Positions 3,991-56,773 of a DNA stretch of 64,000 nucleotides are shown one piece after another. The notes below the pieces were generated by a model. The model had not been told where the DNA came from, searched no databases, and was given only the letters and a program-made list of their open reading frames with translations. A program made the translations under genes and the position numbers. Positions within the stretch are counted from its first letter, which is position 1; each line of letters starts with the position of its first letter. The DNA lies in NCBI RefSeq assembly GCF_001194135.2, contig NC_068993.1, positions 55,477,165 through 55,541,164 on the forward strand. Direction: 5' to 3'. The stretch comes from Octopus bimaculoides. Taxonomy: Eukaryota.

Positions 3991-4722
3991 TTTTAATCTG
4001 TGGAGGTAGTCTTGTACTGAGCAATAGAGTGTATTTTCACTCAGTGAACGCAGCCACTTCAGTTAAGACTGCGATGAGTGATCAGTATCCTTGCAACCGA
4101 CAATATTCTGAGCCTCAGCAGGATTACAGAGTTGGGTGGCAAGGGAAACAGTCAGGATTTTGGTGAGAATGTCTCGCTGAAACAGAGAAAACAAAAGTTG
4201 TTCGATTACATCATGAGATATAGACGACACCATAATGCCATGTGGGACATAAGGTGTCATGAGATAGACTGTATGTCACCTTGGGCAAGTGTTTTTTTTA
4301 CTATAGCCCCAGAGCAACCAAAGCCTTCTGAGTGGATTTGGTAGGTGGAAACTGAAAGAAGCCCAGTGTACATAGATATTTTATCTTTTATCTTTTACTT
4401 GTTTCAGTTGTTAATCTGTAGCCATGCTGGAGCACTGCATTGAAGGGTTTTAGCCGAACCAATTGACCCTAGTAACATTTTTTTAAGCCTGGTACTTGTT
4501 CTATTGGTCTCTTTGGTAAACCACTAAGTCTACTAAATCCACTCACAAGGCTTTGGTTGGCTTGAGGCCATAGTTGAAGACACTTGACAAGGTGCCACAC
4601 AGTGAGCCTGAACCCAGGATCATGTGGTAGGAAAGCAAGCTTCTTACAACACAACCATGCCTGTACATGTATATAAGTATGCATGAGTCTGTGTGTGTGT
4701 GTGTGTTGTGTATGCGCCTTAC

Positions 4723-9117: not shown

Positions 9118-12100
9118 ACACCAACAACTCCAAACTCACCATAACATTTAACCAACCTAGTTTACAAAGATCTCTTAAATCTATGGACTTGAAGCAACCA
9201 TTCTTCATACAAACAACAGTGTCCTCAACTTACTGTGTGAGCATTGTAGGTGTCCAGATATTGTTCATTGTAGGAGAGAGAACATTTATGAATATGGCCA
9301 TCTTCTGTACCAACCATGTAACTGGAAAGAAAAAAAGACACACTATAATATTGGTTTCAAATTTTAGCAGAAGGCCACCAAATTCAAGGGAAGGGATAAG
9401 ATAAGCTGGTTGCACTCAGAACATAAAAACAGACAAAATGCTGCTAAGCATTTTGCCTGACTCGCTCATAACTCTTCCATGTTGCCACCTTGGGCTAAAC
9501 TATAACAACAGTAGTTTCAAATTTTGGCACAAGGCCAGCAATTTTAGGGGAAGTGGTTTGGTTAATTACATCATCCCCAGTACTTGACCTGTTCTTTATC
9601 TTATCAACTCTGAAAGGATGAAAGACAAAGTCGACTTCAATGGAATTTGAAGTCAGGAACATAAAAAGCAAGAAGAAATGCTGCTAAGCATTTTCTGTAA
9701 CACAGAAAGGTGTGGATAATGTATTCGTTTATTCTATTACTTCTTTCAGTCGTTTGACAGCAGCCATGCTGGAGCACTGCCTTAAAGGGTGTAGTGGAAA
9801 TATATAGTCAGTACAAGGTGTTGATGTGGTTGTGTGTATGTTCTTACATGAGTTCATAGGGAGATGAAAGAATAAATTTAAGATCTATATATTTACTCTA
9901 TAAAAATATATTTTATTTACTGGTCAATGATGATGCATAGAATCAAATCATAGAATCTAGTTGAATGAAGTAATCTATGCAAGGAAGTTCAGAGATAGGA
10001 AATGCAGAAATAACAGCTAAGTGGTGGTTTTCAGTCATGTGGTGTAGAGAAATAGACGGACATAGCAATGACGTGAATGGCTCTGAGTCTAATCAACTAT
10101 TAAGCGAAAAGCTGGGTTAGCAACCTGTTTTTATTGGAAATTTCCAAGAGAAACGCTAAGCTTCTTGAATAATTAAGAATCACGTCTCATGACATAGGTG
10201 CTGCGAGGAACTTTGAGAAGGGAGGTTACTCTATGATCTTTCTTGCAAGGGAGATCATTCAACTATTTAGCTACCTACACCACTACAAGGGCTTCAGTTG
10301 GAGAAATCGACCCTGGGACTTATTTTTTGTTAGCCTAGTACATACGCTATCAGTCACTTTTGCAGAACTGCTAAGTTACAGGGACATCAACACACCAACA
10401 TCAGTTGTCAAGCAATGGTGAGGGGACACACACACACACACATACACAGATACACACACACACATATATATATCTATATATATATATATGACAGGCTTCT
10501 TTCAGTTTCCATCTACCAAATCAACTCACAGGGCTTTGGTTGGCCTGAGGCTATAGTAGAAGTGGGACTGAACCTAGAACCATGTGGTTGGGAAACAAAC
10601 TTCTTACCACACAGTCACACCTGCACCTATTGTAGTGACCCTTTTAAATAGAAGACTTACATATTTGGGATGCCAGGTTCGAAACTAATACAAGTTCCAC
10701 AGGCATATCTTGATATATATGTTTCCACTCTCCTCTCCCGTAACTTTGGACCAACTTTGGCTGAACGGCCAATACGGCGTAGATGCATCATGTCTGAAAA
10801 AGGGAAAAAAGGAGAAAGAGTAACAGAACAATCTCTTAGAATAAAACAATCAAATCGAATGTTAATGGCATGGCTTGAGTGGGTGTCCCTGGGGCAGCAC
10901 TTGAGTTTACAGCCCTTTATTTCAGTGCAGCTTATATGTGCTTTTACAGTAGACCCAAAAGTGTTGCACCAGTGAAAATGTCTCCTGGGGTAGACTGTGC
11001 CACCTTGCCCCCCACCCCTGACTCCCCAGTTATGCTACTGTTGTATGTTGTTGTTATCAATGTTGAGGAAGCAAATCAAAGATGAAAAATGTCCTAGCTA
11101 CGACCATCCCATTATTTTGCACAACTAAGACTCATTGTCCAATGTGTCCTTCCTTTCTTTTCAAACAGGATGTTTTCACAGAAATTTAGTTGTTATTTCC
11201 AGTATGTTAAGCCACCACATAGAAATTCTCATTGGTTGCAAGATTGTTATTATTTCACTACTATTTCATCATCATCATCACCATCATTAACATCTGTTTT
11301 CCATGCTGGCATAGGCTGGTTGGTTTGACAATAGCTGGCAATCCAGAGAACTGCCCAAGCTCCAACTGTCTGTTTTGGCATGGTTTCTATGGCTGGATGC
11401 CCTTCCTAATGCCAGCCACTATCTTAACATATTTTCAATCATCTGTCAAAATTTTAAAGTAATATTCAGAAATTTAAGTACTCTGGGACTTAATGGGTTA
11501 ATTTTCATATTTTCTCCTGTTCCACTACAAACCAAAAATTATTCTTAACAATTATTCTGTTATTGCTCCAAGAAATTTGCATGATTTCTTCTTTCTCACC
11601 CCCTCTAATAAAAGAATATCAAACACACCCACCAGTACATTCAAATCCTTTGAGGATTGCCCAAGAGCTGATCCGACCATCTTTGGATATAGAGATGAGA
11701 TATTCCACTTTCTCAGACATCTCTGATCCTGAATCTCGTTCAATCCACTTCACTTCAGACACAGCTGCTGTGTGTCTGTGAGATGACAGGCTGAAAATAA
11801 CAAACATTTTCTATTAAATAGTTGTTAATACCAAAAAAACAACACAGCACCCATGACTTTCAGAAACAAGAGCCAAGGTGTGTTCTCTTTGTGTTGTTGT
11901 AAAGCACAAAATAAAGTTGTTCTTGCCTTGAGTTGCAATCGGCAATAATCCCTCCTAGCATCAGATCACAGGAAAACTAGCCAGACCTCACATTTGTAAC
12001 CATGTGTAAGATCTCCCAACCACTGGCCAACAGACCTACTCTACAACTGCTCCCTACACATATCTGGATCTCGTTGCAGACCCCATAAGAAAGAGGCCAT

Positions 12101-15100: not shown

Positions 15101-17614
15101 GTTAATGGTTGAAGAAAAGGGAATTGCATTAGAAAAAGTTTTAATTGCTGTTGTCGGTAAGTATGGGGGTTAGGAAAAAATAGAAGAGGCATTAAGAAGT
15201 TGACGTTAAGAATTGCTTTAACAGAAAATGAAGCTGTAAGAATTAACAAGAAAATTGTAGTATGTACCTACCGCTAGAAGGTTTGGGTAAGTTATAGAGA
15301 AATCAAGAGCTGTAACACCTGAACGGTGTGGGAACACTTTCTCGGGATACTGAAACAGAAAAAAGTAACACAAAATAACATTAGTTATGGCTGTTACTCG
15401 ATAATGTATGTGAAAATAATGCATGATGTAAACCCTTCATGCCTTCCGATTAACAGCCAAGAACTCCAATCAATAGGGATAGACACTGCATAAAATGAGA
15501 GACCGCTTCTGGTGAAGATCACAAAAATGAAGTTTTGGACATCCATGATGCTTATATCCAGTCTCAATGTTGATGAAGAGGACTGTCTTTGGGAGCCAGT
15601 TATCTGGCATCTGAATCACATAGCCAACCCAGCAGAAAAGATGATGAAGGATGAATACCACAAATATTTACATCCCAGCCCTCAGTTTTCCAGCTATTAA
15701 ACAACTGTAGTAGAATAACACCATGGAATAATGTTAACCTGACAGTACTAGTATTAAAGTCAAGCAATGTTTGAGGATATACAGCATGTAAGCTAGAATA
15801 ATGGAGTGAACCGTAAAGCATTTTCAGTCCAGTGAAACTGAAATTCATAATGAAAAGCTATTAACATTAATGAAAATTTTTTTAAGAAAGAGAAGGGAGA
15901 GAACTCAAAAAATTTCAATTTGAACCTCCTTACCTCAGGATTTTTCATGGACCAGCAACATGCAAGGCCATTCTTCTGGATCTTGAATTCAAACTCTCCA
16001 TATCCGACAGCAATGAGATCCTTTGAAACAAGAGAGTAAAATGACTTGTTAGTAGAGATTATTTCCATAGTGCTGCTTTATATTTCTTGCCACTTACTAC
16101 AGTTATATGAGGTACATTCTAGAAAGTGTGACATTTTTGTTAGTAGAGGCAGTTATAACTGTCCCAGATTATTGTAATTTTAGTATATCATTCTCTCTTT
16201 TTCACCCTTTCAAAGCCTAGCCAAGCTCATGGGCCCGGTTTCCTGGTTTCTATGATATACGTGTTCCCCCCCCCCCCCNNNNNNNNNNNNNNNNNNNNNN
16301 NNNNNNNNNNNNNTTCCCCCCCCCCCCGCCAGCTGGATGGGATGCCAGTCCATCACAGCATTACTCAAGAAACAGGAAGAAAGAGTGAGAGAAAATTGGG
16401 GCGAAAGAGTACAACAGGGGTTGCCGCCACCCCCTGCCGGAGCCTTGTGGAGATTAGGTGTTTCACTCAATAAACACACACAACGCCCGGTCTGGGAATC
16501 GAAACCGCGATCCTCCGACCGCGAGTCCGCTGCCCTAACCACTGGGCCATTGCGCCTCCACAGTATATCATTACAATACATCTAATCAGCTGACCTACCA
16601 ACTTTTGATATTCTATACTGAAGGCAACGGCTATAACAGCACTTTGAACACACCCTACAAAACACTGCTTGTTACAGCTGACCAGTTTGTAGGATGCAGT
16701 CAGGACATGAAGACAATTTGGAAGCACACTAGGCAATGAAGTTTTGTGTTGAACTGGGCAAAAATGCGAGAGAAACTTATGAAATGTTCCAGACTGCTGC
16801 TTATGGATTAACTTGTATAAGCTGAACATTTGTTTGTTACTGGCATAAGAGGTTCGAGGAAGTGGGAGATGACGAGGGGTGTGAGGAGGAGAGGGATGTC
16901 ACAACATCAGGAGTGATTAAGAAAATTCACAATTTTCCGGATAAAGACTGTTGTGTGTCGATAAGGACAATAAGCAAACGGTTTGGAGTTGGTGTGGTAT
17001 AACTGTAGACAGAATTATTTATGAGGATGTGAACATGTGCAAAATCTGTGCAAAGATTGTTCCCAGTGACAAACAGAAGGAAAGACATGTTGGTGACAGC
17101 AGGGAGATAGTTGAGCTTATTATCTCCTACACCATTTTGGTTTCAAGTCCTGCTGCATGGTACCATAGGCAAGTGCCTTCTACTATAGCCTTGGGCCGAC
17201 CAAAGTCTTGTGAGTGGATTTGGTAGAAGGAAACTGAAAGAAGCCCTTGTTTTCACCTTTTCGATATCAGTGAAGAATTTCACTGGAAAAGTATATATAA
17301 GATTGCCAAGAATTTATCTCTCTCATCAAAGATCAGTGGCTATCGGACGCTGACAAAGGGAAATAACCCTGAAACCTGGGTCCGTTCGTGCTACAGATCA
17401 TGATGGGAAGGATAACTTCCCTTGGCAAACAGGACACAGTAGTGTGTCGATAAGCCAGCTGGAGATGTCCTCCTGGGGCTAAAAGCAACAGTAACATCCA
17501 CCCCTAGGGGTCAGCCACACTTAAGTGGCAATATACTACACTTCATCGTGCAGTTACTGTTAATACTTCATTTAGAGAATTAACATATATATATATATAT
17601 TTGTGCATTTGTGT

Positions 17615-17646
<32 letters not shown>

Positions 17647-20600
17647 TTGTGTTTGTCTCCCACCACTACTTGACAGTCAGTGTTGGTGTGTTCACAGCCC
17701 CATATCTTAGCGGTTCAGCAAAAGAGACTGATAGAATAAGTACCAGGCTTTAAAAAAAAATAAGTACTGATGTTGATTCATTCAGCCAAAACATTCTTCA
17801 ACGAGGTGCCCCAGCATGGACGCAGCTTAATAACTGAAACAAGTAAAAGAATATACCCAAGTGTATATGCTAGTTATGATAACAATGATGATGATGATGA
17901 TGATGATGACAATGACAACAACAACAACAATGACGGAGACGAGTACAACAGCACTGAAGAAAGCAAAGAAAGCAGTAATAATACTCACTAAGTTAGAACT
18001 GTTCCATGCCATACAGCTGACAGTGTGACCTTTGGTCAGTGGGCAGGTGAAGGACCAGAGTTTCTGCAAGTTTGGTGACAGGTCCGTTTCACTAGCAGAT
18101 TCCTCCGCTTCGGAAGAATCAACACCTAGCGTATAACAGTTAACCGTTTGTTATAAAGTTTTATAGAATTGTGTGAAACAAACAAATCTTAACGAACCAA
18201 AATAATGATTTATCAAAGTAAATAAAATCAACAATGTATTAATTATTAGGAACAGAAGAAGCATTATCAATATCAAAGATCCAACTTAATACGGATACCT
18301 TTGCTTCCATTGCTAATGATTGATTTTTGATAAACCTGCTGGTTATTTGCGACATCGTCGTCATCATCACCATTTAATGTCCATTGTCCATGCTGGCAAG
18401 GGTTGGACAGTTTGACCGGAGCTGACAGGCCTGGTACTTATTCTATCAATCCCTAAGTTAGAACTGTTCTATGCCATACAACTGACAGTGTGACCNNNNN
18501 NNNNNNNNNNNNNNNNNNNNNNNNNNNNNNNNNNNNNNNNNNNNNNNNNNNNNNNNNNNNNNNNNNNNNNNNNNNNNNNNNNNNNNNNNNNNNNNNNNNN
18601 NNNNNNNNNNNNNNNNNNNNNNNNNNNNNNNNNNNNNNNNNNNNNNNNNNNNNNNNNNNNNNNNNNNNNNNNNNNNNNNNNNNNNNNNNNNNNNNNNNNN
18701 NNNNNNNNNNNNNNNNNNNNNNNNNNNNNNNNNNNNNNNNNNNNNNNNNNNNNNNNNNNNNNNNNNNNNNNNNNNNNNNNNNNNNNNNNNNNNNNNNNNN
18801 NNNNNNNNNNNNNNNNNNNNNNNNNNNNNNNNNNNNNNNNNNNNNNNNNNNNNNNNNNNNNNNNNNNNNNNNNNNNNNNNNNNNNNNNNNNNNNNNNNNN
18901 NNNNNNNNNNNNNNNNNNNNNNNNNNNNNNNNNNNNNNNNNNNNNNNNNNNNNNNNNNNNNNNNNNNNNNNNNNNNNNNNNNNNNNNNNNNNNNNNNNNN
19001 NNNNNNNNNNNNNNNNNNNNNNNNNNNNNNNNNNNNNNNNNNNNNNNNNNNNNNNNNNNNNNNNNNNNNNNNNNNNNNNNNNNNNNNNNNNNNNNNNNNN
19101 NNNNNNNNNNNNNNNNNNNNNNNNNNNNNNNNNNNNNNNNNNNNNNNNNNNNNNNNNNNNNNNNNNNNNNNNNNNNNNNNNNNNNNNNNNNNNNNNNNNN
19201 NNNNNNNNNNNNNNNNNNNNNNNNNNNNNNNNNNNNNNNNNNNNNNNNNNNNNNNNNNNNNNNNNNNNNNNNNNNNNNNNNNNNNNNNNNNNNNNNNNNN
19301 NNNNNNNNNNNNNNNNNNNNNNNNNNNNNGGGAGGAGGAGGAGGAGGGGAGGAGGAGGAGGAGGAGCAAGAAGAAGAGAAGCAACAGCAGCAGCAGCAGG
19401 AGGAGGTTTTATGAAGTGCATGAAATACTCACTAAAACTGACTGGTAAGTTGCGGTACTTGGCTAGTTTCGGTTGGTAAGTATTCAAATTGATTATTCTC
19501 TCCATCACGAATAGATCCCTTACAAAATTCATACTCTGAAATAAATATAAACATCTACTAAATATATACGTGCATATGGTATGTGCATGTGCACATGAAT
19601 GTGTGCATGTGTGCATGTATGCATGTGTACGTGTGCACCAGAACCGTAATTCAAGAGACCTGGTCACAGAGTCACTTTATATATATATATATATATATAT
19701 ACATACATATAGCAATGAGAAAATGGAGGAGAACATACAGAAGATTGCACTACTGGGCGAAGTGAAAGCATGCTATAAAAATAAGACTATTGCATCATCA
19801 TCATCATTATAAATCGTAATTGAACCAAATTCAATGACTGGTATCTGTTCCAGTTCATCCGATCAAAGGAACANNNNNNNNNNCCGCGATCCTATGACCG
19901 CGAGTCCGCTGCCCTAACCACTGGGCCATTGCGCCTGGTGAAATATATATGTTGTATTTACCTGTAATATCACTTCATCAATTTTCACAGGTTCATCCAT
20001 TGTTATTTCTTTGGCCAGTTTGGTAACTTTGGTCTGAGATGATATACTCGAATTTAGTGAAGACATCAAAGTGGATTTCAGAATGTCAGAACCTGAGAAA
20101 AACAATGACAGGGACACTGTAGACATTCATTTCAATTAATAGGCACAGGTGTGACTGTGCAGTAAGAAGTTTGCTTCCCAACCACATGGTTGGGCTACAG
20201 TAGAAGACATTTGCCCAAGGTGCTACACAATGAGATTGATGGTTTTGATTTACTGTCAGGTGACTTTTGGCCAACCCTGTATATATGACAGACATCTTTC
20301 CGTTTCCGTCTACCAAATCCACACAAAAGGCTTTAGTCGGACCAAGAATATATTAGAAGACACTTGACCAAGATGCCATGCAATGAGACTGAGCCCGGAA
20401 CCATGTTATTGGCTTCTTAACCAGTTGTTGTTGCTGTTTGGTTTCAGGTCAACCTTGACCAAGCTGACTTATGATCAGTTAAGTTCTAACTATGACCATC
20501 CAGTCTTTAAATACTATAAGTGACTACATTATCCAACGTTATCTTTGTTTACTAATACAGTAATTTGAGGGGTAATTTAGCTGCTATTTCTAACAAGTCA

Positions 20601-20833: not shown

Positions 20834-23800
20834 GCAAAACGGGCTGATTACTACCTAGATCAGATTCCAGGAAACCCCAAAATGGCTGAAGTTCAAAAAA
20901 TAGTGCTCATGGGAACTGCCCATATCCTACGTAAAATACTGTCTATGTGATCTCAAATTTTAAAGCAAACACATAATTTTCTTATGGTTTCTTAAACATT
21001 CACTTGAACAAAACTGTACAAATACAAATATATGGTACCCTAGGCATAACACCTACATGNNNNNNNNNNNNNNNNNNNNNNNNNNNNNNNNNNNNNNNNN
21101 NNNNNNNNNNNNNNNNNNNNNNNNNNNNNNNNNNNNNNNNNNNNNNNNNNNNNNNNNNNNNNNNNNNNNNNNNNNNNNNNNNNNNNNNNNNNNNNNNNNN
21201 NNNNNNNNNNNNNNNNNNNNNNNNNNNNNNNNNNNNNNNNNNNNNNNNNNNNNNNNNNNNNNNNNNNNNNNNNCAAAACAAAAGTCAAACATAAAATAAT
21301 AATAATAAACACCTTTCGTTGTATTTCTTATCGTTTATCTATTTGTTTCAGTCGTTGGACTGCAGCCATGCTGGGGCACTGAAGGGTTTAGATGACACTA
21401 TCAGTCACTTTTGCCGAACCGCTAGGTTACAGGAACGTAAACAAACCAGCAGTGGTAGAGATGAACACACACACGAGCTTGTTTCAATTGCTCTTTACCA
21501 AATCCACTGTCATGCCATTGGTCGGCGTGAGGCTATAGCAGAAGACACTTGTCCAAGGTGTCACGCAGTGCGACTGAAGTCGGAACCCTGAGGTCGGGAA
21601 ACAAACCTCTTAACACAATCAAACTGGCACCAATAAAGAAAACTATTTGAAATATGTAAAAATTATGTAGAAAATTTGTCATCTTCTACAATATTGAGCG
21701 CACCTCCAAACACACACACACACATATTCTGTTAAGTAGTAGTTGGTAGAACACATGTCAGCAATTCTTCGACTATTAACAAATAATTGCTTCGTTCTGA
21801 AGCGTAAATATCGTTGATAAAGCCAGGAAGATGAAGACAGTTCAAGTGTAAGGGAGATAACTCCGACACTAACGTCAACTGGATAAAATCTAAACGGAGA
21901 GTAACTGAGTAGAAACAATACGAAGACGACGAAGTGTGGATGTTGACCGTAATGATAGGAATAGAGTGTAGGATGTCTATATAGATATGGTGTGTAAGTG
22001 TTAAAGAGGACAACAAACGTTGCTTTTCATCCTTTCGGAGTCGATAAATTAAGTACCAGTTGCGTACTGGGTCGTTCTAATCGACTGGCCCCTTCCCCAA
22101 AAATTTCGGGCCTTTGCCTAGAGTAGAAAAAATGATCGGCAAAATTCAAAGTCTTACAGCTGTTTCTGGGATATCCCAAGGAATGGGATGTTCTATCCTC
22201 AGAGACAAATAGGGAAAATGAGAAGGGTACAGATTAATGAAACGGCAACGTAGAGGACAGGAGAAAAAGAATAAAGAGGTGAAGAAAAAAGAAGAAAGAG
22301 AAGAAAAATGAAGAAAGAGAAGAAAAAAGAAGAAAGAGAAGAAAAAAGAAGCATAATAGTTCATGGTTCAACTTTCCAATCGTGTAGATGTTAGTCCATA
22401 AGTCCTTAGATGACTTGAGAGATGTAGAGACAGTGATAAATAATTTGGCAGTTGTTGACTTTAAAAGGAAGAATAACGATTCAAGTGCTTGGAGGAATGA
22501 CCTGTGTCCAATCAGGAGTACAATGAGAGTTGATGTGAAGAACTGAAAATAGAAAATTTGGTTCCTCTACCAACAACAATAGTATGGAATGAATGTGAGA
22601 ATCAGAAGTAGTTGTGGATGTTGAAGTAACCAAAGACAAGCTACTCAGCGATATTGTTAGTCCACATGACTTCCTAAGGAGCACAGGGCTAGTTTCCTGG
22701 TTTCTTTGACAAATATATATATTTTCTGCTGGATGGGATACCAGTCTGTCACAGAATTACCCGTTTTTGCCAGCTGAGTGGACTGGAGCAATGTGAAATG
22801 AAGTGTTTTGCTCAAGAACACAATGCATCACCCAGTCCAGGAATTGAAACCACAATCTTACTATCGTAAGTCCAACACCCTAACCACTGATGCATGTGCC
22901 TCTGCATTCAGTGATGTAGATGTCCTCAATGCAGGAAGAAATATAGCCAGAGTTAACAATTGAAAAGATTCAGAGCGTGGCAGAGAAAACTAATGTATTA
23001 GGAGAGGGAGAGAGAAAATAACCAGAGTAACTTAGGGGTGGGGAACTAGAGTAACTTAGGGGTGGGGAATCAGAGTAACTAGAGGTCTTTGTTGCTGATA
23101 TGTAGAAGAAAAAAGTAAGTACAATCGATATGTGTGCAGACACCACCTTTCAGAATGACATTTGAGAACAGAAGTGGTCGAAAGGATAAGGGTTGAGAGA
23201 TTCGTTGCTTTCAAGGAGAGGAAGAAAGGATGAGTTACTTGCATGTCAGCAAGAAGTGATGGATAGGGGTCTAGATTGGATTGCAGTTCACAGATGTTAG
23301 AAGAAAAAAACAATTGTCCAGCAGGTTTCGTTATAGATTTTGACATCTAAGGAAATATGGATGCTGTTGTACACCATAGGAGCACAGTTAACTCCTGTTA
23401 GGAGACTGGCACATATATTTGCAACAGACTGAACTCCACTCAAGTAATTTCATACGAAGGTTTGCCAAACAAAACCCAATTATTAAAAGGTACCTTAATT
23501 TGTGATAAGCAGTGTCAAAAATGCAAGACTCTACCTTCAGATTTTCTAGAGCCATACGATTCATCAAATGTTTGTTGGTCTCCTTTTTTCATGCTGCTTT
23601 CATCCAGAAAACTGACATTTTCTATCCAATCTTCATATTCTAGATTATCTTTCCTCACTGAAATTAAAGAAACGCATTTTGTTTGAGAATGAAAATTAAT
23701 ACCATCACCACACCATTATTTAATGTCCACTTCACTATACATGAGTGAGACGAATTTGGTGAGGTAGATTTTCTACAGCTGGAGGCTATTCTAGTCACCA

Positions 23801-26412: not shown

Positions 26413-27242
26413 GAGTGAGAGAACAGTGCATGCCATCAAAGTGACACTGGGATAAAATATAAGAAACCCAGTATACCCATCATGACTACCCGTCTGATAA
26501 GAGTACACTAGCCATGCATTAACAGAGGATGTTATCCAAATTTGGCCCTACAATTATATGATATCTCTTTACCTCATGATACAGGGCATTCCTTTTCATA
26601 ACCAGTTTTGCTTCTTCAGTATCTTGCTGAACACAAGTTGAGATTAGTTCAAACAACATGAATGTCTCTGTCTCTTTCAGATGTATTTCAACTTCCTTTG
26701 TTAAATCAGTTTCTCTAAGAACTGTGGGTGACTCCGATTTTTCTACAACAACTGTAAATAGAAATTGAGATTGATCTTGTTTTTCTTTTCATTTATTGCA
26801 AATATCCTAAAGGATTTATGATTCAGTGTGACCATGTAATAGAGAATAGGAAGCTAGACATAGTCTTAATTGAAAAAGAAAACAAACTATGCAGGATAAT
26901 AGACATAGCATGCCCAGCAGACAACAAGGTATGTGATAAGAAAGAAAGAAAAGTCAAGAGATATGACAGGTTAGCTTGGGAAGTTAAGCAGTTGTGGTCG
27001 ATGAAAAAGGTAGCAGTAGTACCAATAATTGTCAGAGCCCTGGGAACAGTGAGCAAAAATATCGAGGAGCACATGGAACAAATAGGGGCTGTAATAAGGG
27101 TGGAGCACTTGCAGAAAACAGCACTGCTTGGAACCACCTGAATACTCCTGAAGGTGCTCGAAAAATAAGAGGTGTTACCTTAGTTCACTGGTAGTGAGCA
27201 GCTAACAATGCAGTACATCTCCAGCATTAGAAGCTGTGCAAA

Positions 27243-30200: not shown

Positions 30201-32334
30201 GCAAGCTATTTTCTATCAGTGGGCTCTCTTAGAAAAGATTTACAATTTTTGGACGAAAGCATCATCATTTAACATCCCTTTTTCCATACTGGCATGGATT
30301 GGACAGGTCAACAGGTCAAGATGAGGAGGAGGGGAAGATGAGGACGAGGGGAAGATGAGGGGAGGGGAAGATGAGGTGGAGGGGAAGATGAGGAGGAGGG
30401 GAAGATGAGGAGGAGGGGAAGATGAGGATGAGGGGAAGATGNNNNNNNNNNNNNNNNNNNNNNNNNNNNNNNNNNNNNNNNNNNNNNNNNNNNNNNNNNN
30501 NNNNNNNNNNNNNNNNNNNNNNNNNNNNNNNNNNNNNNNNNNNNNNNNNNNNNNNNNNNNNNNNNNNNNNNNNNNNNNNNNNNNNNNNNNNNNNNNNNNN
30601 NNNNNNNNNNNNNNNNNNNNNNNNNNNNNNNNNNNNNNNNNNNNNNNNNNNNNNNNNNNNNNNNNNNNNNNNNNNNNNNNNNNNNNNNNNNNNNNNNNNN
30701 NNNNNNNNNNNNNNNNNNNNNNNNNNNNNNNNNNNNNNNNNNNNNNNNNNNNNNNNNNNNNNNNNNNNNNNNNNNNNNNNNNNNNNNNNNNNNNNNNNNN
30801 NNNNNNNNNNNNNNNNNNNNNNNNNNNNNNNNNNNNNNNNNNNNNNNNNNNNNNNNNNNNNNNNNNNNNNNNNNNNNNNNNNNNNNNNNNNNNNNNNNNN
30901 NNNNNNNNNNNNNNNNNNNNNNNNNNNNNNNNNNNNNNNNNNNNNNNNNNNNNNNNNNNNNNNNNNNNNNNNNNNNNNNNNNNNNNNNNNNNNNNNNNNN
31001 NNNNNNNNNNNNNNNNNNNNNNNNNNNNNNNNNNNNNNNNNNNNNNNNNNNNNNNNNNNNNNNNNNNNNNNNNNNNNNNNNNNNNNNNNNNNNNNNNNNN
31101 NNNNNNNNNNNNNNNNNNNNNNNNNNNNNNNNNNNNNNNNNNNNNNNNNNNNNNNNNNNNNNNNNNNNNNNNNNNNNNNNNNNNNNNNNNNNNNNNNNNN
31201 NNNNNNNNNNNNNNNNNNNNNNNNNNNNNNNNNNNNNNNNNNNNNNNNNNNNNNNNNNNNNNNNNNNNNNNNNNNNNNNNNNNNNNNNNNNNNNNNNNNN
31301 NNNNNNNNNNNNNNNNNNNNNNNNNNNNNTATACATTTTATCTTTTACTTGTTTCAGTCATTTAACTGTGGCCATACTGGGGTACCACCTTGAAGAACTT
31401 TTAGTTGAATGATGAATCCACTCTAGTACTTATTATTTGTTTTTTTTTTTTTGTAAGCCTGGTACTTATTCTAATGGTAAGTACCAGGTACTTATTTAGA
31501 GCCAGTCCATCGGCACTGGCAACAATCTTGCTCGAATGTCTTTTCACGTGCCACTGGCACAAGTGCCAGGGAGGCGACCGCTTATTTGCACAAACATTTC
31601 ACATACAGTAGAAGATACTCACACACTGAGTCAATTAAATATTATAGTTTCTCTTCTCTCATAAATCTGATCTAATGATTTAATGGATTGCTTCAGAGTT
31701 GAACTTATAGCAATACATAATCCATGAAATATTCTTGTCTGATTTTGGATCTTACTTTTTCATATCAGAGTAGAAAGCCCTGCAAAACTCTTGGAACTGC
31801 CCCTCCTCCTTTAACTTACAAAAAAGAAAAATGAGTCTTCATGATTATTGCTATCTCTGAGATGATTAGGAGAACTGTAAGATATTGGTACTAATTTATA
31901 ATCATGAACACAAAAATTGCCTGCAGACTACATGAAGATGTCTTTCATTAAAAATTTATACTAGTTTTTAATGTTGAATGTCATAAAAATTGTCATAATC
32001 CTGCCAATGCTAGATAAATGAAGTTTCATAATTTTTTTTATTGGTCATCCATATAAGAGAGATTTCAAATTTATTCTATATTTTTATATTAAATTTACCT
32101 CCCTAACACTTGGAAAACTTCAGACCATTTTATGAGGGAAATAAAATTTTAAGACAATTATTCTTAGGACTAAGAGCAGACTTAAAGGAAACTTTATTCA
32201 AATGTTAAATATCAGAAAAAGTGAAAATATCTTGGTTGCTTCTCCTAAAACTGAGAATGATTATTCTTAAAATTCTAATAAAATCTCTAATGAACATACC
32301 GGTTTTGGTGAGTTTTCGTCGATTTTTGCTCCAT
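4723..32334 (-). CDS. DNAI4: Dynein axonemal intermediate chain 4 (WDR78; IC138-like WD40 protein), multi-exon gene span; terminal coding exon not resolved
   Basis: 20 GT-AG exons with matching phases give motifs such as [106 protein letters not shown], which match WDR78 as recalled. Confidence 0.93.
5132..5219 (-). CDS. DNAI4: DNAI4 exon (LDPIIHYSP...[10 protein letters not shown])
   Basis: tttcacag/gtatgt, phase 2-0. Confidence 0.92.
5387..5801 (-). mobile_element. Two tandem tRNA-derived SINEs of the family with the gactttgcctttcatcctttcggggtcgataaa core (Nin/Deu-like domain)
   Basis: Same core recurs at ~9400-9700, 25600-25900, 27290-27415, 29340-29570, 38300-38480, 42492-42700, 57120-57300, 63260-63490. 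Confidence 0.75.
5830..5927 (-). CDS. DNAI4: DNAI4 exon ([32 protein letters not shown])
   Basis: cattacag/gtaagt, phase 0-2, WD repeat. Confidence 0.93.
6030..6330 (-). mobile_element. (GAT)n-tailed interspersed repeat (LINE 3' end or SINE)
   Basis: ggaagggcatccagctgtaaaa...gatgttaaacgatgatgatg; copies at ~7740-8030, 11270-11420, 18350-18430, 50320-50480, 56770-56920, 57410-57620. Confidence 0.7.
6355..6680 (+). mobile_element. tRNA-derived SINE (gtgtccttgagcaagacactt family)
   Basis: A/B-box-like head ggatgtggctgaatggttagg...gttcgattccc; reverse copy at ~60190-60500; copy split by a nested insertion at ~57310-57740. Confidence 0.7.
6690..7010 (-). mobile_element. Tc1/mariner 3' remnant with TIR-like end
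   Basis: [33 protein letters not shown] translation; CAGGGTGTTTG terminus after a TA-rich site. Confidence 0.6.
7506..7634 (-). CDS. DNAI4: DNAI4 exon ([31 protein letters not shown]...FFSSI)
   Basis: tattccag/gtaagt, phase 0-0. Confidence 0.94.
9234..9321 (-). CDS. DNAI4: DNAI4 exon ([29 protein letters not shown])
   Basis: ctttccag/gtaagt, phase 2-0, most diagnostic WDR78 motif. Confidence 0.95.
10661..10793 (-). CDS. DNAI4: DNAI4 exon (DMMHLRR...[19 protein letters not shown])
   Basis: tttttcag/gtaagt, phase 1-2. Confidence 0.9.
11633..11790 (-). CDS. DNAI4: DNAI4 exon ([17 protein letters not shown]...[21 protein letters not shown])
   Basis: attttcag/gtgggt, phase 2-1. Confidence 0.92.
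12700..12773 (-). CDS. DNAI4: DNAI4 exon ([24 protein letters not shown])
   Basis: atttccag/gtaaga, phase 0-2. Confidence 0.92.
14720..15000. repeat. Diverged ~35-40 bp minisatellite with TTCYNRGAA palindromes, running into a gap
   Basis: Unit like gaactttccaggaagtaattcgcccctcttccccttcctt. Confidence 0.8.
15272..15349 (-). CDS. DNAI4: DNAI4 exon ([26 protein letters not shown])
   Basis: gtttcag/gtaggt, phase 0-0. Confidence 0.93.
15934..16020 (-). CDS. DNAI4: DNAI4 exon ([29 protein letters not shown])
   Basis: tttcaaag/gtaagg, phase 0-0. Confidence 0.94.
16203..16560 (-). mobile_element. Near full-length tRNA-derived SINE with Meta/V-type central domain
   Basis: tRNA-like head ggaggcgcaatggcccagtggttagggcagcggactcgcgg...ggtttcgattccc; central gatggactggcatcccatccag; 3' end agaaaccaggaaaccgggcccatgagc. 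Confidence 0.75.
16705..17125 (+). mobile_element. Mariner transposase N-terminal (HTH) remnant
   Basis: [45 protein letters not shown] with stops and frameshifts. Confidence 0.75.
17331..17399 (+). ncRNA. Type I hammerhead ribozyme motif, extended Schistosoma-like architecture, G8A core variant
   Basis: Stem I GATC-a-GTGGC-tat-CGGACG / CGTTCG-t-GCTAC-a-GATC; core CTGACAA; stem II AGGG-aaataa-CCCT; GAAA; stem III CC-tg-GG; GTC cleavage triplet 17380-17382. Confidence 0.78.
17989..18125 (-). CDS. DNAI4: DNAI4 exon (VDSSEAEE...[27 protein letters not shown])
   Basis: acgctag/gtgagt, phase 1-0, start of WD40 region. Confidence 0.92.
18454..18495 (-). pseudogene. Duplicated fragment of DNAI4 exon 17989-18125 with premature stop, abutting a gap
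   Basis: 40/42 identical to 17989-18030; TGG to TAG; donor site replaced by SINE sequence. Confidence 0.8.
19433..19535 (-). CDS. DNAI4: DNAI4 exon ([34 protein letters not shown])
   Basis: tatttcag/gtgagt, phase 0-1, strongly conserved motif. Confidence 0.93.
19884..19936 (-). mobile_element. 5' head fragment of the same SINE family, ~25 bp from a DNAI4 donor site
   Basis: Near-identical to 16505-16557. Confidence 0.75.
19962..20092 (-). CDS. DNAI4: DNAI4 exon (GSDILKSTL...KIDEVILQ)
   Basis: tttctcag/gtaaat, phase 1-0. Confidence 0.8.
20834..21310 (+). mobile_element. 5'-truncated R4/Dong-type (RLE) non-LTR retrotransposon inserted in a (TAA)n tract
   Basis: [38 protein letters not shown] (stop 20948-20950) then 3' UTR; (TAA)n on both sides. 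Confidence 0.7.
22150..23400 (-). mobile_element. Highly decayed Penelope-like RT remnant, interrupted by a SINE at ~22690-22905
   Basis: Scattered motifs LDVK.., DPYPS, CIEDI (YIDD-like), SDSH, IPFL in expected order across frameshifts. Confidence 0.35.
23535..23657 (-). CDS. DNAI4: DNAI4 exon ([11 protein letters not shown]...GSRKSE)
   Basis: aatttcag/gtagag, open frame, symmetric phase 1-1; low-conservation linker, could be skippable. Confidence 0.65.
24795..25260 (-). mobile_element. RTE-clade LINE reverse transcriptase fragment, degraded
   Basis: [11 protein letters not shown] and [13 protein letters not shown]...[12 protein letters not shown] (YADD-type motif decayed). Confidence 0.75.
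25488..25554 (-). CDS. DNAI4: DNAI4 exon ([22 protein letters not shown])
   Basis: ttattccag/gtaagt, phase 0-1, WD.YD motif. Confidence 0.88.
26038..26145 (-). CDS. DNAI4: DNAI4 exon ([36 protein letters not shown])
   Basis: tatttcag/gttagt, phase 0-0, NR.GND.YV motif. Confidence 0.9.
26411..26520 (-). mobile_element. (TAA)n-tailed short element, copy 1 of an inverted pair
   Basis: ~90% identical (manual alignment) to the reverse complement of 27416-27528. Confidence 0.75.
26573..26751 (-). CDS. DNAI4: DNAI4 exon (VVEKSESP...[11 protein letters not shown]...KRNALYHE)
   Basis: tttacag/gtaaag, phase 1-0, I.L.ETET and RN..Y motifs. Confidence 0.88.
26800..27244 (+). mobile_element. R4/Dong-type RLE non-LTR retrotransposon 3' fragment (restriction-like endonuclease domain)
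   Basis: [19 protein letters not shown]...[23 protein letters not shown]...VVPIIV.ALG.V...LQKTALLGT; ends directly at (TAA)15. Confidence 0.8.
27416..27528 (+). mobile_element. (TAA)n-tailed short element, copy 2 of the inverted pair
   Basis: See 26411-26520. Confidence 0.75.
27558..27634 (-). CDS. DNAI4: DNAI4 exon ([25 protein letters not shown])
   Basis: ttttccag/gtatta, phase 2-1 bridges neighbouring exons. Confidence 0.75.
28273..28420 (-). mobile_element. Tc1-like 3' end remnant with TIR
   Basis: TA-GGGGTGTCCAAAAATCACCTG terminus; decayed C-terminal transposase-like sequence. Confidence 0.5.
28547..28608 (-). CDS. DNAI4: DNAI4 exon ([21 protein letters not shown])
   Basis: tttctccag/gtaagt, phase 0-2, G.F.R motif. 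Confidence 0.82.
29889..29972 (-). CDS. DNAI4: DNAI4 exon ([28 protein letters not shown])
   Basis: ttgtag/gtaagt, phase 0-0, conserved DVTP.PL motif. Confidence 0.88.
30319..30441. repeat. 18-bp purine-rich minisatellite (gatgaggaggaggggaa-like) running into a gap
   Basis: Direct reading. Confidence 0.85.
31820..31874 (-). CDS. DNAI4: DNAI4 tentative exon 2 ([18 protein letters not shown])
   Basis: tcttacag acceptor and gtaagt donor, phase 2 to 0 fits flanking exons; peptide not recognisable. Confidence 0.3.
32300..32334 (-). CDS. DNAI4: DNAI4 putative first coding exon ([12 protein letters not shown])
   Basis: Only ATG near the promoter on the minus strand (caagATGG) followed by CG|gtatgt donor; no homology support for this divergent N-terminus. 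Confidence 0.5.
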
Positions 32335-54000: not shown

Positions 54001-55708
54001 AGTGTGTGTGTGTGTGTGTTTGGCCCTATATCACAGATAAGGGTAGGTGGAAATTTTGGGTGGGAAACCAACTGTATGTCCACAGATTTGTGGAGTTATT
54101 GCAGGTTACCTGCAATAAGTTTGCCGTTAGAGATAGAGAATTAGCAAATCTTTTGGGAAAATTAATCTGTGTTCACATTTGACAGGCTGCCATCTTCCTG
54201 CCGATGTCCTATGATCTGTAATTATTGAAGAAAAGGTTTACCTGTGCAATTGTTTTCTTTGTCAATTTGTTTTTGACATTTTCTATAGGAAAATGTCAAA
54301 AGACCATTTGTGGCCTTTTTTTTTTTTTTTTTTTTTTTTTNNNNNNNNNNNNNNNNNNNNNNNNNNNNNNNNNNNNNNNNNNNNNNNNNNNNNNNNNNNN
54401 NNNNNNNNNNNNNNNNNNNNNNNNNNNNNNNNNNNNNNNNNNNNNNNNNNNNNNNNNNNNNNNNNNNNNNNNNNNNNNNNNNNNNNNNNNNNNNNNNNNN
54501 NNNNNNNNNNNNNNNNNNNNNNNNNNNNNNNNNNNNNNNNNNNNNNNNNNNNNNNNNNNNNNNNNNNNNNNNNNGGGGGGGTATTTTTAATTCCATGTGT
54601 AGCTGGTTTAAAGGATTGATCTCCCTCTTGAATAATTAATTTCAGTATTCTACTTATGCTTTATTCACTCCAAGAGGGATGAAACTAAGTCACGATACTG
54701 ACTATCTCTACATTGTTACCAAATCAACGCCTTGAATATACTTGAAGGAAGAATATCAGCCCATAACTAACACTTGCTGGCATTTAATTTAGTCTTCCTA
54801 CCTTCAATGAAAAATAAAATATATTGAGGTTGTATTAATCAGTTTTGACCTTTCTCTGTAAAAGAAAGAAACCTATTAGAGTTTGGGGGTTTATTTAGTC
54901 GTTTGTTTTTTGTTTTTTATTTTACTTTGGGACAATTTTTTTGTATATTTGTTATTTCTCCACTCCTTCGTTTTATATTAATCTAAATTTATCAGTTTTG
55001 TAGCACAGAGAAGTAATAAGCTACATGATTATGGCATTGCATTCAATAATTAAAGCAGGGGTGGCTATGTTGTAAGAAACTTGCTTCCCAACTACACGGT
55101 TCAAGGTTCAATCTCACTGCATGGCACCTTGGGCAAGTGTCTTCTACCATTGCCTCAGGTTGACTAAAGCCTTGAGTGGGTTTGGTAGACGGAAACTTGT
55201 TAGTGGATTTGGTAGAAAGAAAGCCGTCTTGTGTTTGTCCCCTACCACTGCTAGACAACCAGTGTTGGTGTGTTTATATCCCCGTAACTTAGTGTTTCAG
55301 CAAAAGAGTCCAATAGAATAAATAAGTGCCGGGTTTAACAAAAAAATATTACTGTAGTCGATTCATTTGGTTAAAAATTCAAGGTGGTGCCCAAGCATGG
55401 CTACAATCTAATGAGTGAAACAAATTAATGCTAAAAGATAAAGCATCTTAATGTTGTTGATATAGTTCTCTCTAGCTGTGGTGGAATGCATTGTTTTAAG
55501 TTGTCTTCATTTTCTTCCCCCACCCCATTCCAACTGATTCTAACATGTACATATTATATATAACATTATAGACCAGACCTGGGTTTGCATCTATTTTGCC
55601 AATTAACCATACACATGTCAATAAGAAGTAACTGGTTTGTTGATTGAATCCAATAATTTATAGCCTGGATTAGCAGTTTTTTTTTTAATATTCATGTTCT
55701 TTTGCATG

Positions 55709-55762
<54 letters not shown>

Positions 55763-56741
55763 GTTTTAAAGCCTTTTCATAATGATGTACTCCTCATTCA
55801 CCATTTTCATTTTTCAGCCTTAACAATTCATTAGTCCAATTACCCAGTTTTTCAAACCATTTTACTCTATAATTCTAGGACTTCTGGGATTTCGTTAGAT
55901 AGTACTTAGTAATTTAACCCATTTCCAATCAGATTTACTGTTTCTGGTAACACTATCCTATTGTTAGATGCTAAAGCCATTTGGCTTATCATGGACTTTC
56001 ACCAATACTTCTCACAGCTAACAAAATTATTGTTCCCTTCAGCCAAGCATCACATTTAAATAGTTTTTTATTCAGGCATTCAAGCTCTCATTTGTCATCA
56101 GTCACCATAAATAGCATTCATTGTGTGATTGTGTTACTCCTGTACCATACTTGCGAATGAGAGTTAATATATGCTTTGTTGTTTCACATTACTAATGTGT
56201 CGTTTATGGACAGAATTACATGTTGTCTTCTCTGAAACTTGCTTTCTTTTCTCATTTATTTTCTTATTTTATTTTGTTTCTTTCCAGGAGGGAGAAATGC
56301 CTTTAGAGAACTTATTGGCTATGTATGGTTGTAATAACAACACACCCGAGACGTTGGAGTCCAGCTGCTTTCAGGACACACGATCGAGTAGCGAAGAAGA
56401 GATTCTCAGCAGCCAAGACCTCACCCTAGACAAAGAGGAGATTGCACGTGACCTTCTCTCCAACAGTGATGAAGATGACAAAGAAACAAATGTAAACGAC
56501 CTTCTCGACAGTGTTTCATCGTCACAAACTGCCCGTCTACTTCGATGTGAGTTTCACCTCTCTTTACTTTCTTTTACTCTTACACTCGTTTCAGTCATTT
56601 GACTGTGGCCATGCTAGAGCACCGCCTTTAGTTGAGCAAATCGACCCCAGGACTTATTCTATCGGTCTCTTTTGCCGAACCACTAAGTTACGGGGACGTA
56701 AACACACCAGCATCGGTTGTCAAGCGATGTTGCGGGGACAA

Positions 56742-56773
<32 letters not shown>

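What the first reader, a model, noticed from the sequence alone, without database searches (positions are those of the whole stretch)
17331..17399. Extended type I hammerhead ribozyme with Schistosoma-like tertiary architecture hidden in a DNAI4 intron
Seen in sequence: every hammerhead element is present in order. Stem I is CGGACG(17344-49)/CGTTCG(17383-88), extended across a TAT/T internal loop by GTGGC/GCTAC and GATC/GATC. The core is CTGACAA (17350-56), stem II is AGGG-AAATAA-CCCT, then GAAA, a minimal stem III and a GTC cleavage triplet. ACCTGGGT is self-complementary with G-U pairs, as in dimer-forming type I hammerheads. Established knowledge: the 3-nt UAY bulge 6 bp from the core plus an AAUA-containing hexaloop is the layout of the S. 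mansoni Sm-alpha hammerhead (UAC bulge, CAAAUA loop), where loop-bulge contacts give fast cleavage. Inference: the only core defect is G8 to A, breaking C3-G8; it is a CG to CA change, the expected CpG decay product, so this may be a decayed copy of an active family. It lies antisense to DNAI4.
Basis: partly seen in the sequence, partly recalled or inferred. Interest (0 to 1): 0.85.

Follow-up and report, generated by a model that had tools for sequence, protein, structure and literature searches.

The report
Decayed hammerhead ribozyme copy in intron
A 69-base stretch in an intron of a dynein gene has the full layout of an animal-type self-cutting hammerhead RNA but carries a disabling change in its catalytic core, so it is most likely a dead single leftover of a small mobile element, not a working ribozyme.

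Summary
It matches the geometry of experimentally cleaving animal type I hammerheads (HHRs). That geometry is a 6-bp proximal helix I, a 3x1-nt internal loop, a distal helix, a 4-bp helix II with an A-rich hexaloop, a 2-bp helix III with a self-complementary tetraloop, and a GUC site.

It has two defects.

A strict descriptor finds only this site in the window. The chance expectation is about 5e-4 per window. A covariance model built from four verified animal HHRs ranks it first, at 16 bits and E about 0.03. Rfam reports nothing, but Rfam also misses a perfect-core HHR found in a metagenome contig, so that negative is uninformative.

The motif caps a 126-nt hairpin inside a 333-nt, highly structured, single-copy insertion. 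The insertion sits at the (TA)n microsatellite of a SINE, which is itself nested in a dead mariner. All of this lies antisense in a DNAI4 intron.

No other copy could be found, so family membership, covariation and activity remain untested.

Best reading: an inactive relic of a retrozyme-like or Penelope-like element hammerhead. This is a known kind of element, and interest is modest.

The parts
17331..17399 (+). Hammerhead-like motif with type I topology. The distal helix I is GAUC/GAUC plus GUGGC/GCUAC, and the internal loop is UAU x U.
   Evidence: The sequence is shown. It is the only descriptor hit in the window. The 69-mer folds at -25.8 kcal/mol, z = -3.96.
17344..17388 (+). Core hammerhead. 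Proximal helix I is 17344-49/17383-88. The CUGACAA box is 17350-56, with A17355 at position 8. Helix II and its loop span 17357-70. GAAA is 17371-74. Helix III is A17374-U17381 and C17375-G17380, with loop CUGG. The predicted ancestral cleavage site is 3' of C17382.
   Evidence: Model R1 matches it full-length (positions 1-44) at 16.0 bits, E 0.031, with all 12 pairs standard. It is the top hit in the window.
17303..17428 (+). Long imperfect hairpin in which helix I continues for about 33 more base pairs. The hammerhead-like core sits at its tip.
   Evidence: The + strand of 17300-17435 folds at -53.5 kcal/mol (z -6.5). The - strand folds at -43.8 (z -3.0). The pair list shows 3 G-U against 1 C-A.
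17251..17583 (+). Insertion 'X': 333 nt, 42.6% GC, hairpin-rich and single-copy in the window. It carries the motif. It may be two pieces: a 40-nt hairpin at 17251-17290 and a 284-nt unit at 17300-17583, with GTATATATA between them.
   Evidence: In the alignment of five SINE copies, only this copy has sequence between 'GAAGCC..GT' and the (TA)n(TG)n tract. It has no other copy in the window. It folds at -111.6 kcal/mol, z -6.05.
17136..17250 (+). Head of an abundant SINE copy. This is the host of the insertion.
   Evidence: BLAST against other copies in the window and alignment A1.
17584..17865 (+). The (TA)n(TG)n microsatellite and tail of the same SINE copy.
16694..17127 (+). Decayed mariner-type transposase remnant (N-terminal DNA-binding part) that is interrupted by the SINE.
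   Evidence: tblastn with P0001 gives 4e-21. blastn to L001 gives 5e-35. Pfam HTH_48 matches at E 0.004.
15934..16017 (-). Nearest recognisable DNAI4-like exon downstream in gene orientation. It matches human DNAI4 residues about 494-526.
   Evidence: phmmer against PDB chain 8j07_k2 gives E 1.2e-10.
26573..26731 (-). DNAI4-like exon upstream in gene orientation. It matches human DNAI4 residues about 222-276.
   Evidence: phmmer against 8j07_k2 gives E 2.8e-4, and against Chlamydomonas IC138 gives 1.1e-4.

Best explanation
The motif is an inactive relic (a pseudo-ribozyme) of a canonical animal type I hammerhead. A small structured retroelement of about 284-333 nt brought it here. That element was of the non-LTR retrozyme / Penelope-like-element kind. 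It inserted at the (TA)n microsatellite of a SINE copy inside a DNAI4 intron, on the antisense strand.

In its ancestral, intact form the RNA would have folded into three helices around the CUGANGA/GAAA core. The helix I internal loop (UAU x U) would have docked on the A-rich loop of helix II. The RNA would then have cut itself 3' of C17 (C17382), probably most efficiently as a dimer through the self-complementary helix III. That cut releases unit-length RNA, which can be circularised and reverse-transcribed.

The present copy has lost the G8 that pairs with C3 and is needed for catalysis. It also has a weakened A-U pair at 10.1-11.1. I therefore infer that it does not cleave at a meaningful rate and has no effect on DNAI4, whose pre-mRNA carries only the reverse complement.

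What is shown: the sequence layout, its statistical excess over chance, the nesting of elements, the strong predicted folding, and the gene context.

What is inferred: the descent from an active family, the type of element, the decay path and the present inactivity.
For: (1) Every structural element sits at the spacing seen in HHRs that were shown to cleave. These are coral, mussel and two axolotl sequences (supplement of PMC7229834) and Sm1/N79.
- All have a 6-bp proximal helix I and a 4-bp helix II.
- Axolotl and Schistosoma have a 3-nt x 1-nt(U) internal loop. Ax330 and Sm1/N79 also have a 6-nt CAAAxA loop 2.
- Mussel and Ax353 have the same 2-bp helix III plus tetraloop.

(2) It is the only descriptor hit in the window. 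The expected chance rate is 5e-4 per window, or 4.5e-6 with the canonical loop and distal helix.

(3) Covariance model R1 was built only from the four verified HHRs. It ranks the site first in 128 kb at 16.0 bits, E about 0.03. In 542 kb of unrelated contigs pre-selected to contain a perfect core, the best full-length score was 15.6 bits.

(4) The same helix III (GAAAC-CUGG-GUC) occurs in a perfect-core HHR with a 9-bp helix I and a 5-bp helix II, in metagenome contig L085.

(5) The carrier is a discrete insertion of retrozyme-like size (170-400 nt) and GC content (<45-50%) (PMC7229834). It folds far better than shuffles, z -6. It sits at a (TA)n tract, the kind of microsatellite target reported for Penelope-like elements (PMC8557442).

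(6) Three departures from an ideal HHR are CpG-to-TpG/CpA changes. They are G8A, C11.1U, and loop 3 CCCGGG to CCTGGG, which would restore a perfect palindrome like those of all four reference HHRs. The window is strongly CpG-depleted, with an observed/expected ratio of 0.35.
Against: - The invariant G8 is A, and the 10.1-11.1 pair is A-U. By sequence alone this is not a hammerhead.
- Rfam reports no hammerhead, even at E<=10 in a 91-nt search. This is weak evidence, because Rfam also misses L085.
- The custom model E-value is only about 0.03-0.1, and the model rests on four sequences.
- No second copy of the insertion or the motif was found. The searches covered the window, 5.8 billion predicted proteins by six-frame query, and metagenome contigs.
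- The unit is single, not tandem, and no reverse transcriptase lies next to it.
- The helix I extension could simply be a DNA-level inverted repeat. The G-U versus C-A asymmetry of 3:1 is too small to show selection at the RNA level.
- The CpG-decay argument is post hoc.
- I do not know how many windows the first stage screened.
Confidence: 0.6

Rival explanations
1. It is a chance look-alike. An unclassified, palindrome-rich insertion happens to carry a hammerhead-like string with one core mismatch in the loop of a long inverted repeat. There never was a ribozyme.
For: - The core is not intact: G8A, and A-U at 10.1-11.1.
- Rfam reports nothing.
- The custom model score is borderline: 16 bits against 15.6 for the best background hit.
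- No relatives were found anywhere.
- The insertion is full of short palindromes and both strands fold well, z -6.05 and -4.5. Helix I therefore needs no RNA-level explanation.
- About 22 one-mismatch descriptor hits are expected by chance in a 2.7-Gb genome, and the number of windows screened is unknown.
Against: - The expectation per window is 5e-4. It drops to 4.5e-6 once the canonical 3x1 loop and distal helix are required, which is about 0.2 per genome.
- Even if the hairpin is taken as given, a random 33-nt loop still has to supply the core, helix II, helix III and the GUC at exact spacing.
- The match to the Schistosoma/axolotl geometry covers features that the statistics did not use. 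These are U in both strands of loop 1, an A-rich hexaloop and a self-complementary helix III.
Confidence: 0.3
2. It is a working ribozyme as it stands. Examples would be a dimer-dependent or slow-cleaving variant that tolerates C3-A8, acting on an antisense transcript of the DNAI4 intron.
For: - The peripheral architecture that gives fast cleavage in natural HHRs is complete.
- Helix III can form an 8-bp intermolecular duplex.
- A natural axolotl HHR with a U-U mismatch at the base of helix II still cleaves, although weakly (PMC7229834).
Against: - From established hammerhead biochemistry (my own knowledge, not tested here), G8 pairs with C3 and takes part in catalysis. Single G8 substitutions lower the rate by orders of magnitude.
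- There is no evidence of conservation, of other copies or of transcription.
- With only one copy at this locus, the dimer route has no partner.
Confidence: 0.04
3. The stretch is a leftover of the neighbouring mariner transposase reading frame (for example GAAACCTGGGTC = E-T-W-V of the 'DE(S/T)W(I/V)' motif), so its resemblance to a ribozyme is incidental.
For: - A mariner remnant ends at 17127, just upstream.
- By eye, translations of 17300-17560 can be lined up with mariner motifs.
Against: - Frameshift-tolerant protein-to-DNA alignment against the family consensus, and DNA alignment against a related copy (L001), both score within the range of shuffled controls.
- Pfam finds no transposase domain there.
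- The stretch lies inside a SINE copy, not in line with the mariner.
Confidence: 0.03

Closest known systems
Canonical type I hammerheads of animal non-LTR retrozymes and satellite-like repeats (axolotl HHR_Amex1/2, newt satellite 2, Schistosoma mansoni Sm-alpha/Sm1)
   Same: - Type I topology.
- A 6-bp proximal helix I, then a 3-nt (U-N-Y) x 1-nt (U) internal loop and a distal helix.
- A 4-bp helix II capped by an A-rich hexaloop: CAAAUA or CAAAAA in the known ones, AAAUAA here.
- A helix III of 1-2 bp with a self-complementary tetraloop that allows dimers.
- A GUC/GUA cleavage triplet.
- A carrier unit of about 330 nt with low GC.
   Different: - G8 is A and 10.1-11.1 is A-U.
- The loop 3 palindrome needs two G-U pairs.
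- It is a single unit, not a tandem array.
- No other copies are known.
- Helix I continues as an unusually long duplex of about 45 bp.
- It is intronic, whereas vertebrate retrozymes are reported as depleted from introns (bioRxiv 10.64898/2026.07.22.740005).
Mussel (Mytilus galloprovincialis) retrozyme hammerhead
   Same: - Mollusc.
- The same helix III design: GAAA-C-NNNN-G-UC.
- A 3-nt 5' side of the helix I internal loop.
- A 350-390-nt carrier.
   Different: - The mussel core is intact and the RNA cleaves in vitro.
- There are thousands of tandem copies.
- There is no sequence similarity outside the core.
Minimal type I hammerheads in pseudo-LTRs of Penelope-like elements
   Same: - Short helix III with a palindromic loop.
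- Association with retroelements that favour microsatellite targets such as (TA)n (PMC8557442).
   Different: - Those HHRs lack the loop 1 / loop 2 architecture seen here.
- No RT or GIY-YIG reading frame lies next to this copy.
Metagenome contig Ga0099809_10884631 (L085:1296-1340), a perfect-core type I hammerhead
   Same: Identical GAAAC-CUGG-GUC helix III and type I topology.
   Different: - L085 has an intact CUGAUGA box and a G-C pair at 10.1-11.1.
- It has a 5-bp helix II with a tetraloop, and a continuous 9-bp helix I without an internal loop.
- Its flanks are unrelated.

Membership tests
Hammerhead ribozyme, type I | Conserved box CUGANGA (C3 U4 G5 A6 N7 G8 A9) | tested here: not met
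   The sequence is CUGACAA, with A at position 8. The other five fixed positions match.
Hammerhead ribozyme, type I | Conserved box GAAA (G12 A13 A14 A15.1), with A15.1 paired to U16.1 | tested here: met
   GAAA lies at 17371-74, and A17374 can pair with U17381.
Hammerhead ribozyme, type I | Cleavage triplet N-U-H (here GUC), followed directly by the 3' strand of helix I | tested here: met
   G17380 U17381 C17382, then CGUUCG pairing with CGGACG.
Hammerhead ribozyme, type I | Three helices around the core, with helix I open-ended | tested here: met
   All 12 modelled pairs are standard in the R1 alignment. The descriptor also hits the site.
Hammerhead ribozyme, type I | G10.1-C11.1 pair closing helix II (near-invariant) | tested here: not met
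   The pair is A17357-U17370. One natural but weak axolotl HHR has U-U here, so the rule is not absolute.
Hammerhead ribozyme, type I | Score above the Rfam gathering threshold for a hammerhead model | tested here: not met
   No hammerhead hit at gathering or at E<=10. Calibration: the same scan misses the perfect-core HHR in L085 at E<=1, so the test has low sensitivity for this subtype.
Hammerhead ribozyme, type I | Helix I / helix II tertiary-contact architecture of canonical animal HHRs (internal loop 6 bp from the core; A-rich loop 2) | tested here: met
   The geometry is identical to Sm1/N79 and the axolotl HHRs: a UAU x U loop after 6 bp, and hexaloop AAAUAA. Whether the contact itself forms cannot be tested with these tools.
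Hammerhead ribozyme, type I | Covariation of the helices among homologues | tested here: inconclusive
   No homologue could be retrieved, so there is nothing to count.
Hammerhead ribozyme, type I | Site-specific self-cleavage | not testable with these tools
   This needs in vitro transcription. I infer that the native sequence is inactive because of G8A.
Animal non-LTR retrozyme | Unit of about 150-450 nt with low GC that folds into a compact structure | tested here: met
   333 nt and 42.6% GC. MFE -111.6 kcal/mol, z -6.05.
Animal non-LTR retrozyme | Head-to-tail tandem copies (dimers to multimers), each with an HHR | tested here: not met
   It is a single unit. There is no second copy or second HHR in the window.
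Animal non-LTR retrozyme | Many dispersed copies in the genome, and expression as linear and circular RNA | not testable with these tools
   The source genome and its transcriptomes are not available here.
Penelope-like element pseudo-LTR | Adjacent RT / GIY-YIG reading frame or pLTR arrangement | tested here: not met
   The neighbours are a mariner remnant and a SINE. Pfam finds only HTH_48 in 16650-17600. No RT-like ORF lies nearby.

The most novel reading that the evidence does not exclude
The relic marks an undescribed family of retrozyme-like elements in this (probably cephalopod) genome. The family would carry a Schistosoma/amphibian-type canonical hammerhead. Intact siblings elsewhere would still self-cleave and produce small circular RNAs. 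The unusually long helix I rod and the (TA)n target would be its distinguishing traits.
Probability: 0.3. Interest if true: 0.4.

Novelty: new member of a known kind. Interest (0 to 1): 0.2.

Why it matters
If it is a real relic, it adds one more lineage to the already long list of animals whose genomes carry type I hammerheads in small retroelements. It also gives a query (the 333-nt unit) for finding intact, possibly circRNA-producing siblings in that genome.

This dead, antisense, intronic copy should have no effect on DNAI4.

There is also a methods point. Rfam hammerhead models, as run here, miss animal-type hammerheads with a minimal helix III, even when the core is perfect. A negative Rfam scan should therefore not be read as absence.

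Tried and rejected
1. Rfam scans at gathering, and at E<=10 on 551-nt and 91-nt stretches, gave no hammerhead. The scan was later shown to be insensitive for this subtype.

2. Mariner reading-frame remnant. I tested whether 17251-17583 continues or duplicates the neighbouring mariner reading frame. Alignments that looked convincing by eye were no better than shuffled controls. I rejected the idea.

3. A concatenated six-frame translation of the insertion was searched against 5.8 billion proteins and gave no hit at E<=10.

4. A degenerate pattern of the motif found 0 matches in metagenome contigs. A looser pattern gave 120 loci. Of these, 119 lack the helices and one (L085) is a genuine-looking but unrelated HHR.

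5. MAFFT alignments that included the distal helix or N79 were structurally wrong. Only the trimmed four-sequence alignment was usable.

6. Comparing the energy of the hammerhead fold with the MFE was uninformative. The candidate's HHR fold is 7.7 kcal/mol above its MFE, but verified HHRs are also 3-10 kcal/mol above theirs.

7. tRNA-derived origin: ARAGORN found no tRNA in 15500-18500, and Rfam found no tRNA hit.

8. There is no similarity of the insertion to the coral or mussel retrozymes, to L085 or to L001.

9. A search for a named DNAI4 orthologue to identify the species found no candidates.

10. Literature searches found no report of hammerheads or retrozymes in cephalopods.
Full report
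**Observation.** The window sequence at 17331-17399 reads GATC-A-GTGGC-TAT-CGGACG-CTGACAA-AGGG-AAATAA-CCCT-GAAA-C-CTGG-G-TC-CGTTCG-T-GCTAC-A-GATC.

In hammerhead (HHR) numbering the parts are:
- Strand 2.6-2.1: CGGACG.
- Core: C3 U4 G5 A6 C7 A8 A9.
- Helix II: AGGG/CCCU, with loop AAAUAA.
- G12 A13 A14.
- Helix III: A15.1-U16.1 and C15.2-G16.2, with loop CUGG.
- C17 is C17382.
- Strand 1.1-1.6: CGUUCG.

There are two departures from consensus, not one. G8 is A, and the 10.1-11.1 pair is A-U.

**Is it more than chance?**

I wrote a descriptor from five reference hammerheads. It requires a 6-bp helix I, CUGANGA, a 4-bp helix II, a loop of 5-6 nt, GAAA, a helix III with 4-8 nt inside, and U-H.
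- With up to two core mismatches allowed, the candidate is the only hit on either strand of the window.
- With the window's base composition, the expected number of hits per 64-kb window is 1.5e-5 with no mismatch and 5.2e-4 with one mismatch.
- If the 3x1 internal loop and a distal helix of at least 5 bp are also required, the expectation is 4.5e-6 per window. That is about 0.2 per 2.7-Gb genome (the formula was checked by simulation).

I also built a covariance model (R1). It uses only four animal type I hammerheads that were shown to cleave: coral Amil224, mussel Mg353, and axolotl Ax353 and Ax330. Their sequences come from the supplement of PMC7229834, the alignment is A4, and the model was built.
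- With filters off, R1 ranks the candidate first in the window at 16.0 bits, E about 0.03. The match is full-length and has no non-standard pair.
- The next hits, at 12.8 bits or less, are fragments with large deletions.
- In 542 kb of unrelated contigs, each chosen because it contains a perfect core string, the best full-length score was 15.6 bits.

Rfam gave no hammerhead hit at gathering, nor at E<=10 in 551-nt or 91-nt searches. I calibrated this negative.
- A pattern scan of metagenome contigs returned one convincing perfect-core type I hammerhead, L085:1296-1340. It has a 9-bp helix I, a 5-bp helix II and the same GAAAC-CUGG-GUC helix III.
- R1 gives it 25.8 bits, yet the Rfam scan does not report it at E<=1.
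- The Rfam negative is therefore uninformative for this subtype.

**Context.**

The locus is a nest of mobile elements.
- 16694-17127 is the decayed N-terminal part of a mariner transposase (tblastn 4e-21; blastn 5e-35 to a related copy; Pfam HTH_48).
- That remnant is interrupted by a copy of a SINE that occurs many times in the window.
- Aligning five SINE copies shows that only this one has 333 nt (17251-17583) between the end of the SINE head and its (TA)n(TG)n microsatellite.
- This insertion carries the motif. It has no other copy in the window.

On the minus strand, three reading-frame pieces match human DNAI4 (PDB 8j07 chain k2):
- 26573-26731 matches residues about 222-276.
- 15934-16017 matches residues about 494-526.
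- 7509-7634 matches residues about 704-744.

**The insertion itself.**
- It is 333 nt long with 42.6% GC.
- Its + strand folds at -111.6 kcal/mol (z -6.05). Its - strand folds at -105.6 (z -4.5).
- Helix I of the motif continues outward for about 33 more pairs (17303-17340 with 17390-17428), so the hammerhead-like core caps a 126-nt hairpin.
- That hairpin (folded as 17300-17435) is 10 kcal/mol more stable on the + strand. This rests on only three G-U pairs against one C-A, too few to prove selection at the RNA level.
- The left junction can also be read as a 40-nt hairpin (17251-17290), then GTATATATA, then a 284-nt unit. In that reading the unit is flanked by TA repeats on both sides. Target-site duplications cannot be recognised in such a tract.

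**Comparison with known hammerheads.**

The four verified sequences and Sm1/N79 all have a 6-bp proximal helix I and a 4-bp helix II. In detail:
- Axolotl and Schistosoma have a 3-nt 5' loop starting with U (UGC, UUC, UAC) opposite a single U. The candidate has UAU opposite U.
- Their loop 2 is CAAAAA or CAAAUA. The candidate has AAAUAA.
- Mussel and Ax353 have helix III as C-NNNN-G. The candidate has C-CUGG-G.
- In all four verified HHRs, the segment from A15.1 to U16.1 is a perfect palindrome. The candidate's ACCUGGGU becomes one (ACCCGGGU) if a single CpG-to-TpG change is reversed.
- G8A is a CpG-to-CpA change, and C11.1-to-U is a CpG-to-TpG change.
- The window's CpG observed/expected ratio is 0.35, so such changes are the dominant mutation type here.

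This decay argument is suggestive but post hoc.

Animal type I hammerheads are known to reside in non-LTR retrozymes. These are tandem units of 170-400 nt with low GC, expressed as circular RNAs (PMC7229834). They also reside in Penelope-like elements, which favour microsatellite targets (PMC8557442). Recent work derives animal retrozymes from Penelope-like elements and finds them depleted in introns.

**Most likely explanation (confidence about 0.6).**

This is a dead copy of a canonical type I hammerhead, delivered by a small structured retroelement.

In the ancestral state, the transcript would have folded around the core, with loop 1 docking on loop 2. It would have cut 3' of C17 and released unit-length RNA for circularisation and reverse transcription. 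The short self-complementary helix III suggests cleavage as a dimer.

In the present state, G8, which pairs with C3 and is required for catalysis, is lost. That role of G8 is established hammerhead biochemistry and my own knowledge; I did not test it here. The base of helix II is also weakened. I infer that the copy has no meaningful activity. DNAI4 pre-mRNA contains only the reverse complement.

**Rivals.**
- A chance look-alike in the loop of an inverted repeat (about 0.3). In its favour are the broken core, the borderline model score, the absence of relatives and the unknown number of windows screened. Against it are the low chance expectation and the agreement in features that the statistics did not use.
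- A ribozyme that is active as it stands (about 0.04). This is unlikely because of G8A.
- A remnant of the mariner reading frame. I tested this and rejected it, because alignments that looked good by eye did not beat shuffled controls.

**What I could not do.**

No eukaryotic genome collection was available. Copy number, family consensus, covariation and orthologous loci are therefore untested. A six-frame protein search, two metagenome pattern scans and a search for a DNAI4 orthologue gave no relatives. Comparing the hammerhead fold with the MFE was uninformative, because verified hammerheads are also 3-10 kcal/mol above their MFE.

**Verdict.**

This is a probable fossil of a known kind of element. 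Interest is 0.2. The classification is 'new member of a known kind', pending a genome-wide search.

Noticed in passing
L085:1296-1340 (metagenome contig Ga0099809_10884631): A perfect-core type I hammerhead with a 9-bp helix I, a 5-bp helix II and helix III GAAAC-CUGG-GUC, in AT-rich DNA that looks eukaryotic. My model gives it 25.8 bits, but the Rfam scan at E<=1 does not report it. The model's own default filters also lose it.
   Followed up: partly
window 16694-17127 (+): A decayed mariner-type transposase N-terminus with stops and frameshifts. It is 45% identical to P0001 and 65% identical in DNA to a fuller copy in ENA contig L001. That fuller copy is also frameshifted.
   Followed up: yes
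window 4269-4586, 10318-10562, 17136-17865, 20295-20382, 21340-21568, 31341-31473, 55117-55423, 56652-57071, 57736-57803: At least nine copies or fragments of one SINE family with an internal (TA)n(TG)n microsatellite. They are about 75-90% identical to each other.
   Followed up: partly
window 16330-16560 (similar stretches at 19884-19936 and 22728-22889): A second repeat family whose minus strand looks tRNA-like by eye. ARAGORN calls no tRNA there.
   Followed up: no
window, whole: Strong CpG depletion (observed/expected 0.35) with an excess of TpG+CpA (1.27). There are also 13 runs of N (assembly gaps). Two of them, 16279-16313 and 18496-19329, lie close to the locus.
   Followed up: partly
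window 26818-27141 (+) and 58652-59262 (+): Open reading frames that look like retroelement and Tc1/mariner-type transposase C-terminal fragments. The first lies next to the DNAI4-like exon at 26573-26731. Neither was searched against family libraries.
   Followed up: no
window 17356-17370 and 17409-17423: The helix II hairpin (AAGGGAAATAACCCT) is 80% complementary to a segment of the right arm of the long hairpin (AGGATAACTTCCCTT). This gives a possible competing pairing, or hints at an internal duplication within the insertion.
   Followed up: no
L020:10-44 and 121-155 (contig JACCDO011112995.1): Two matches to the core pattern lie 111 nt apart on one strand, which suggests a tandem repeat. 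The flanks do not form helices I and II, so this is probably not a hammerhead.
   Followed up: partly
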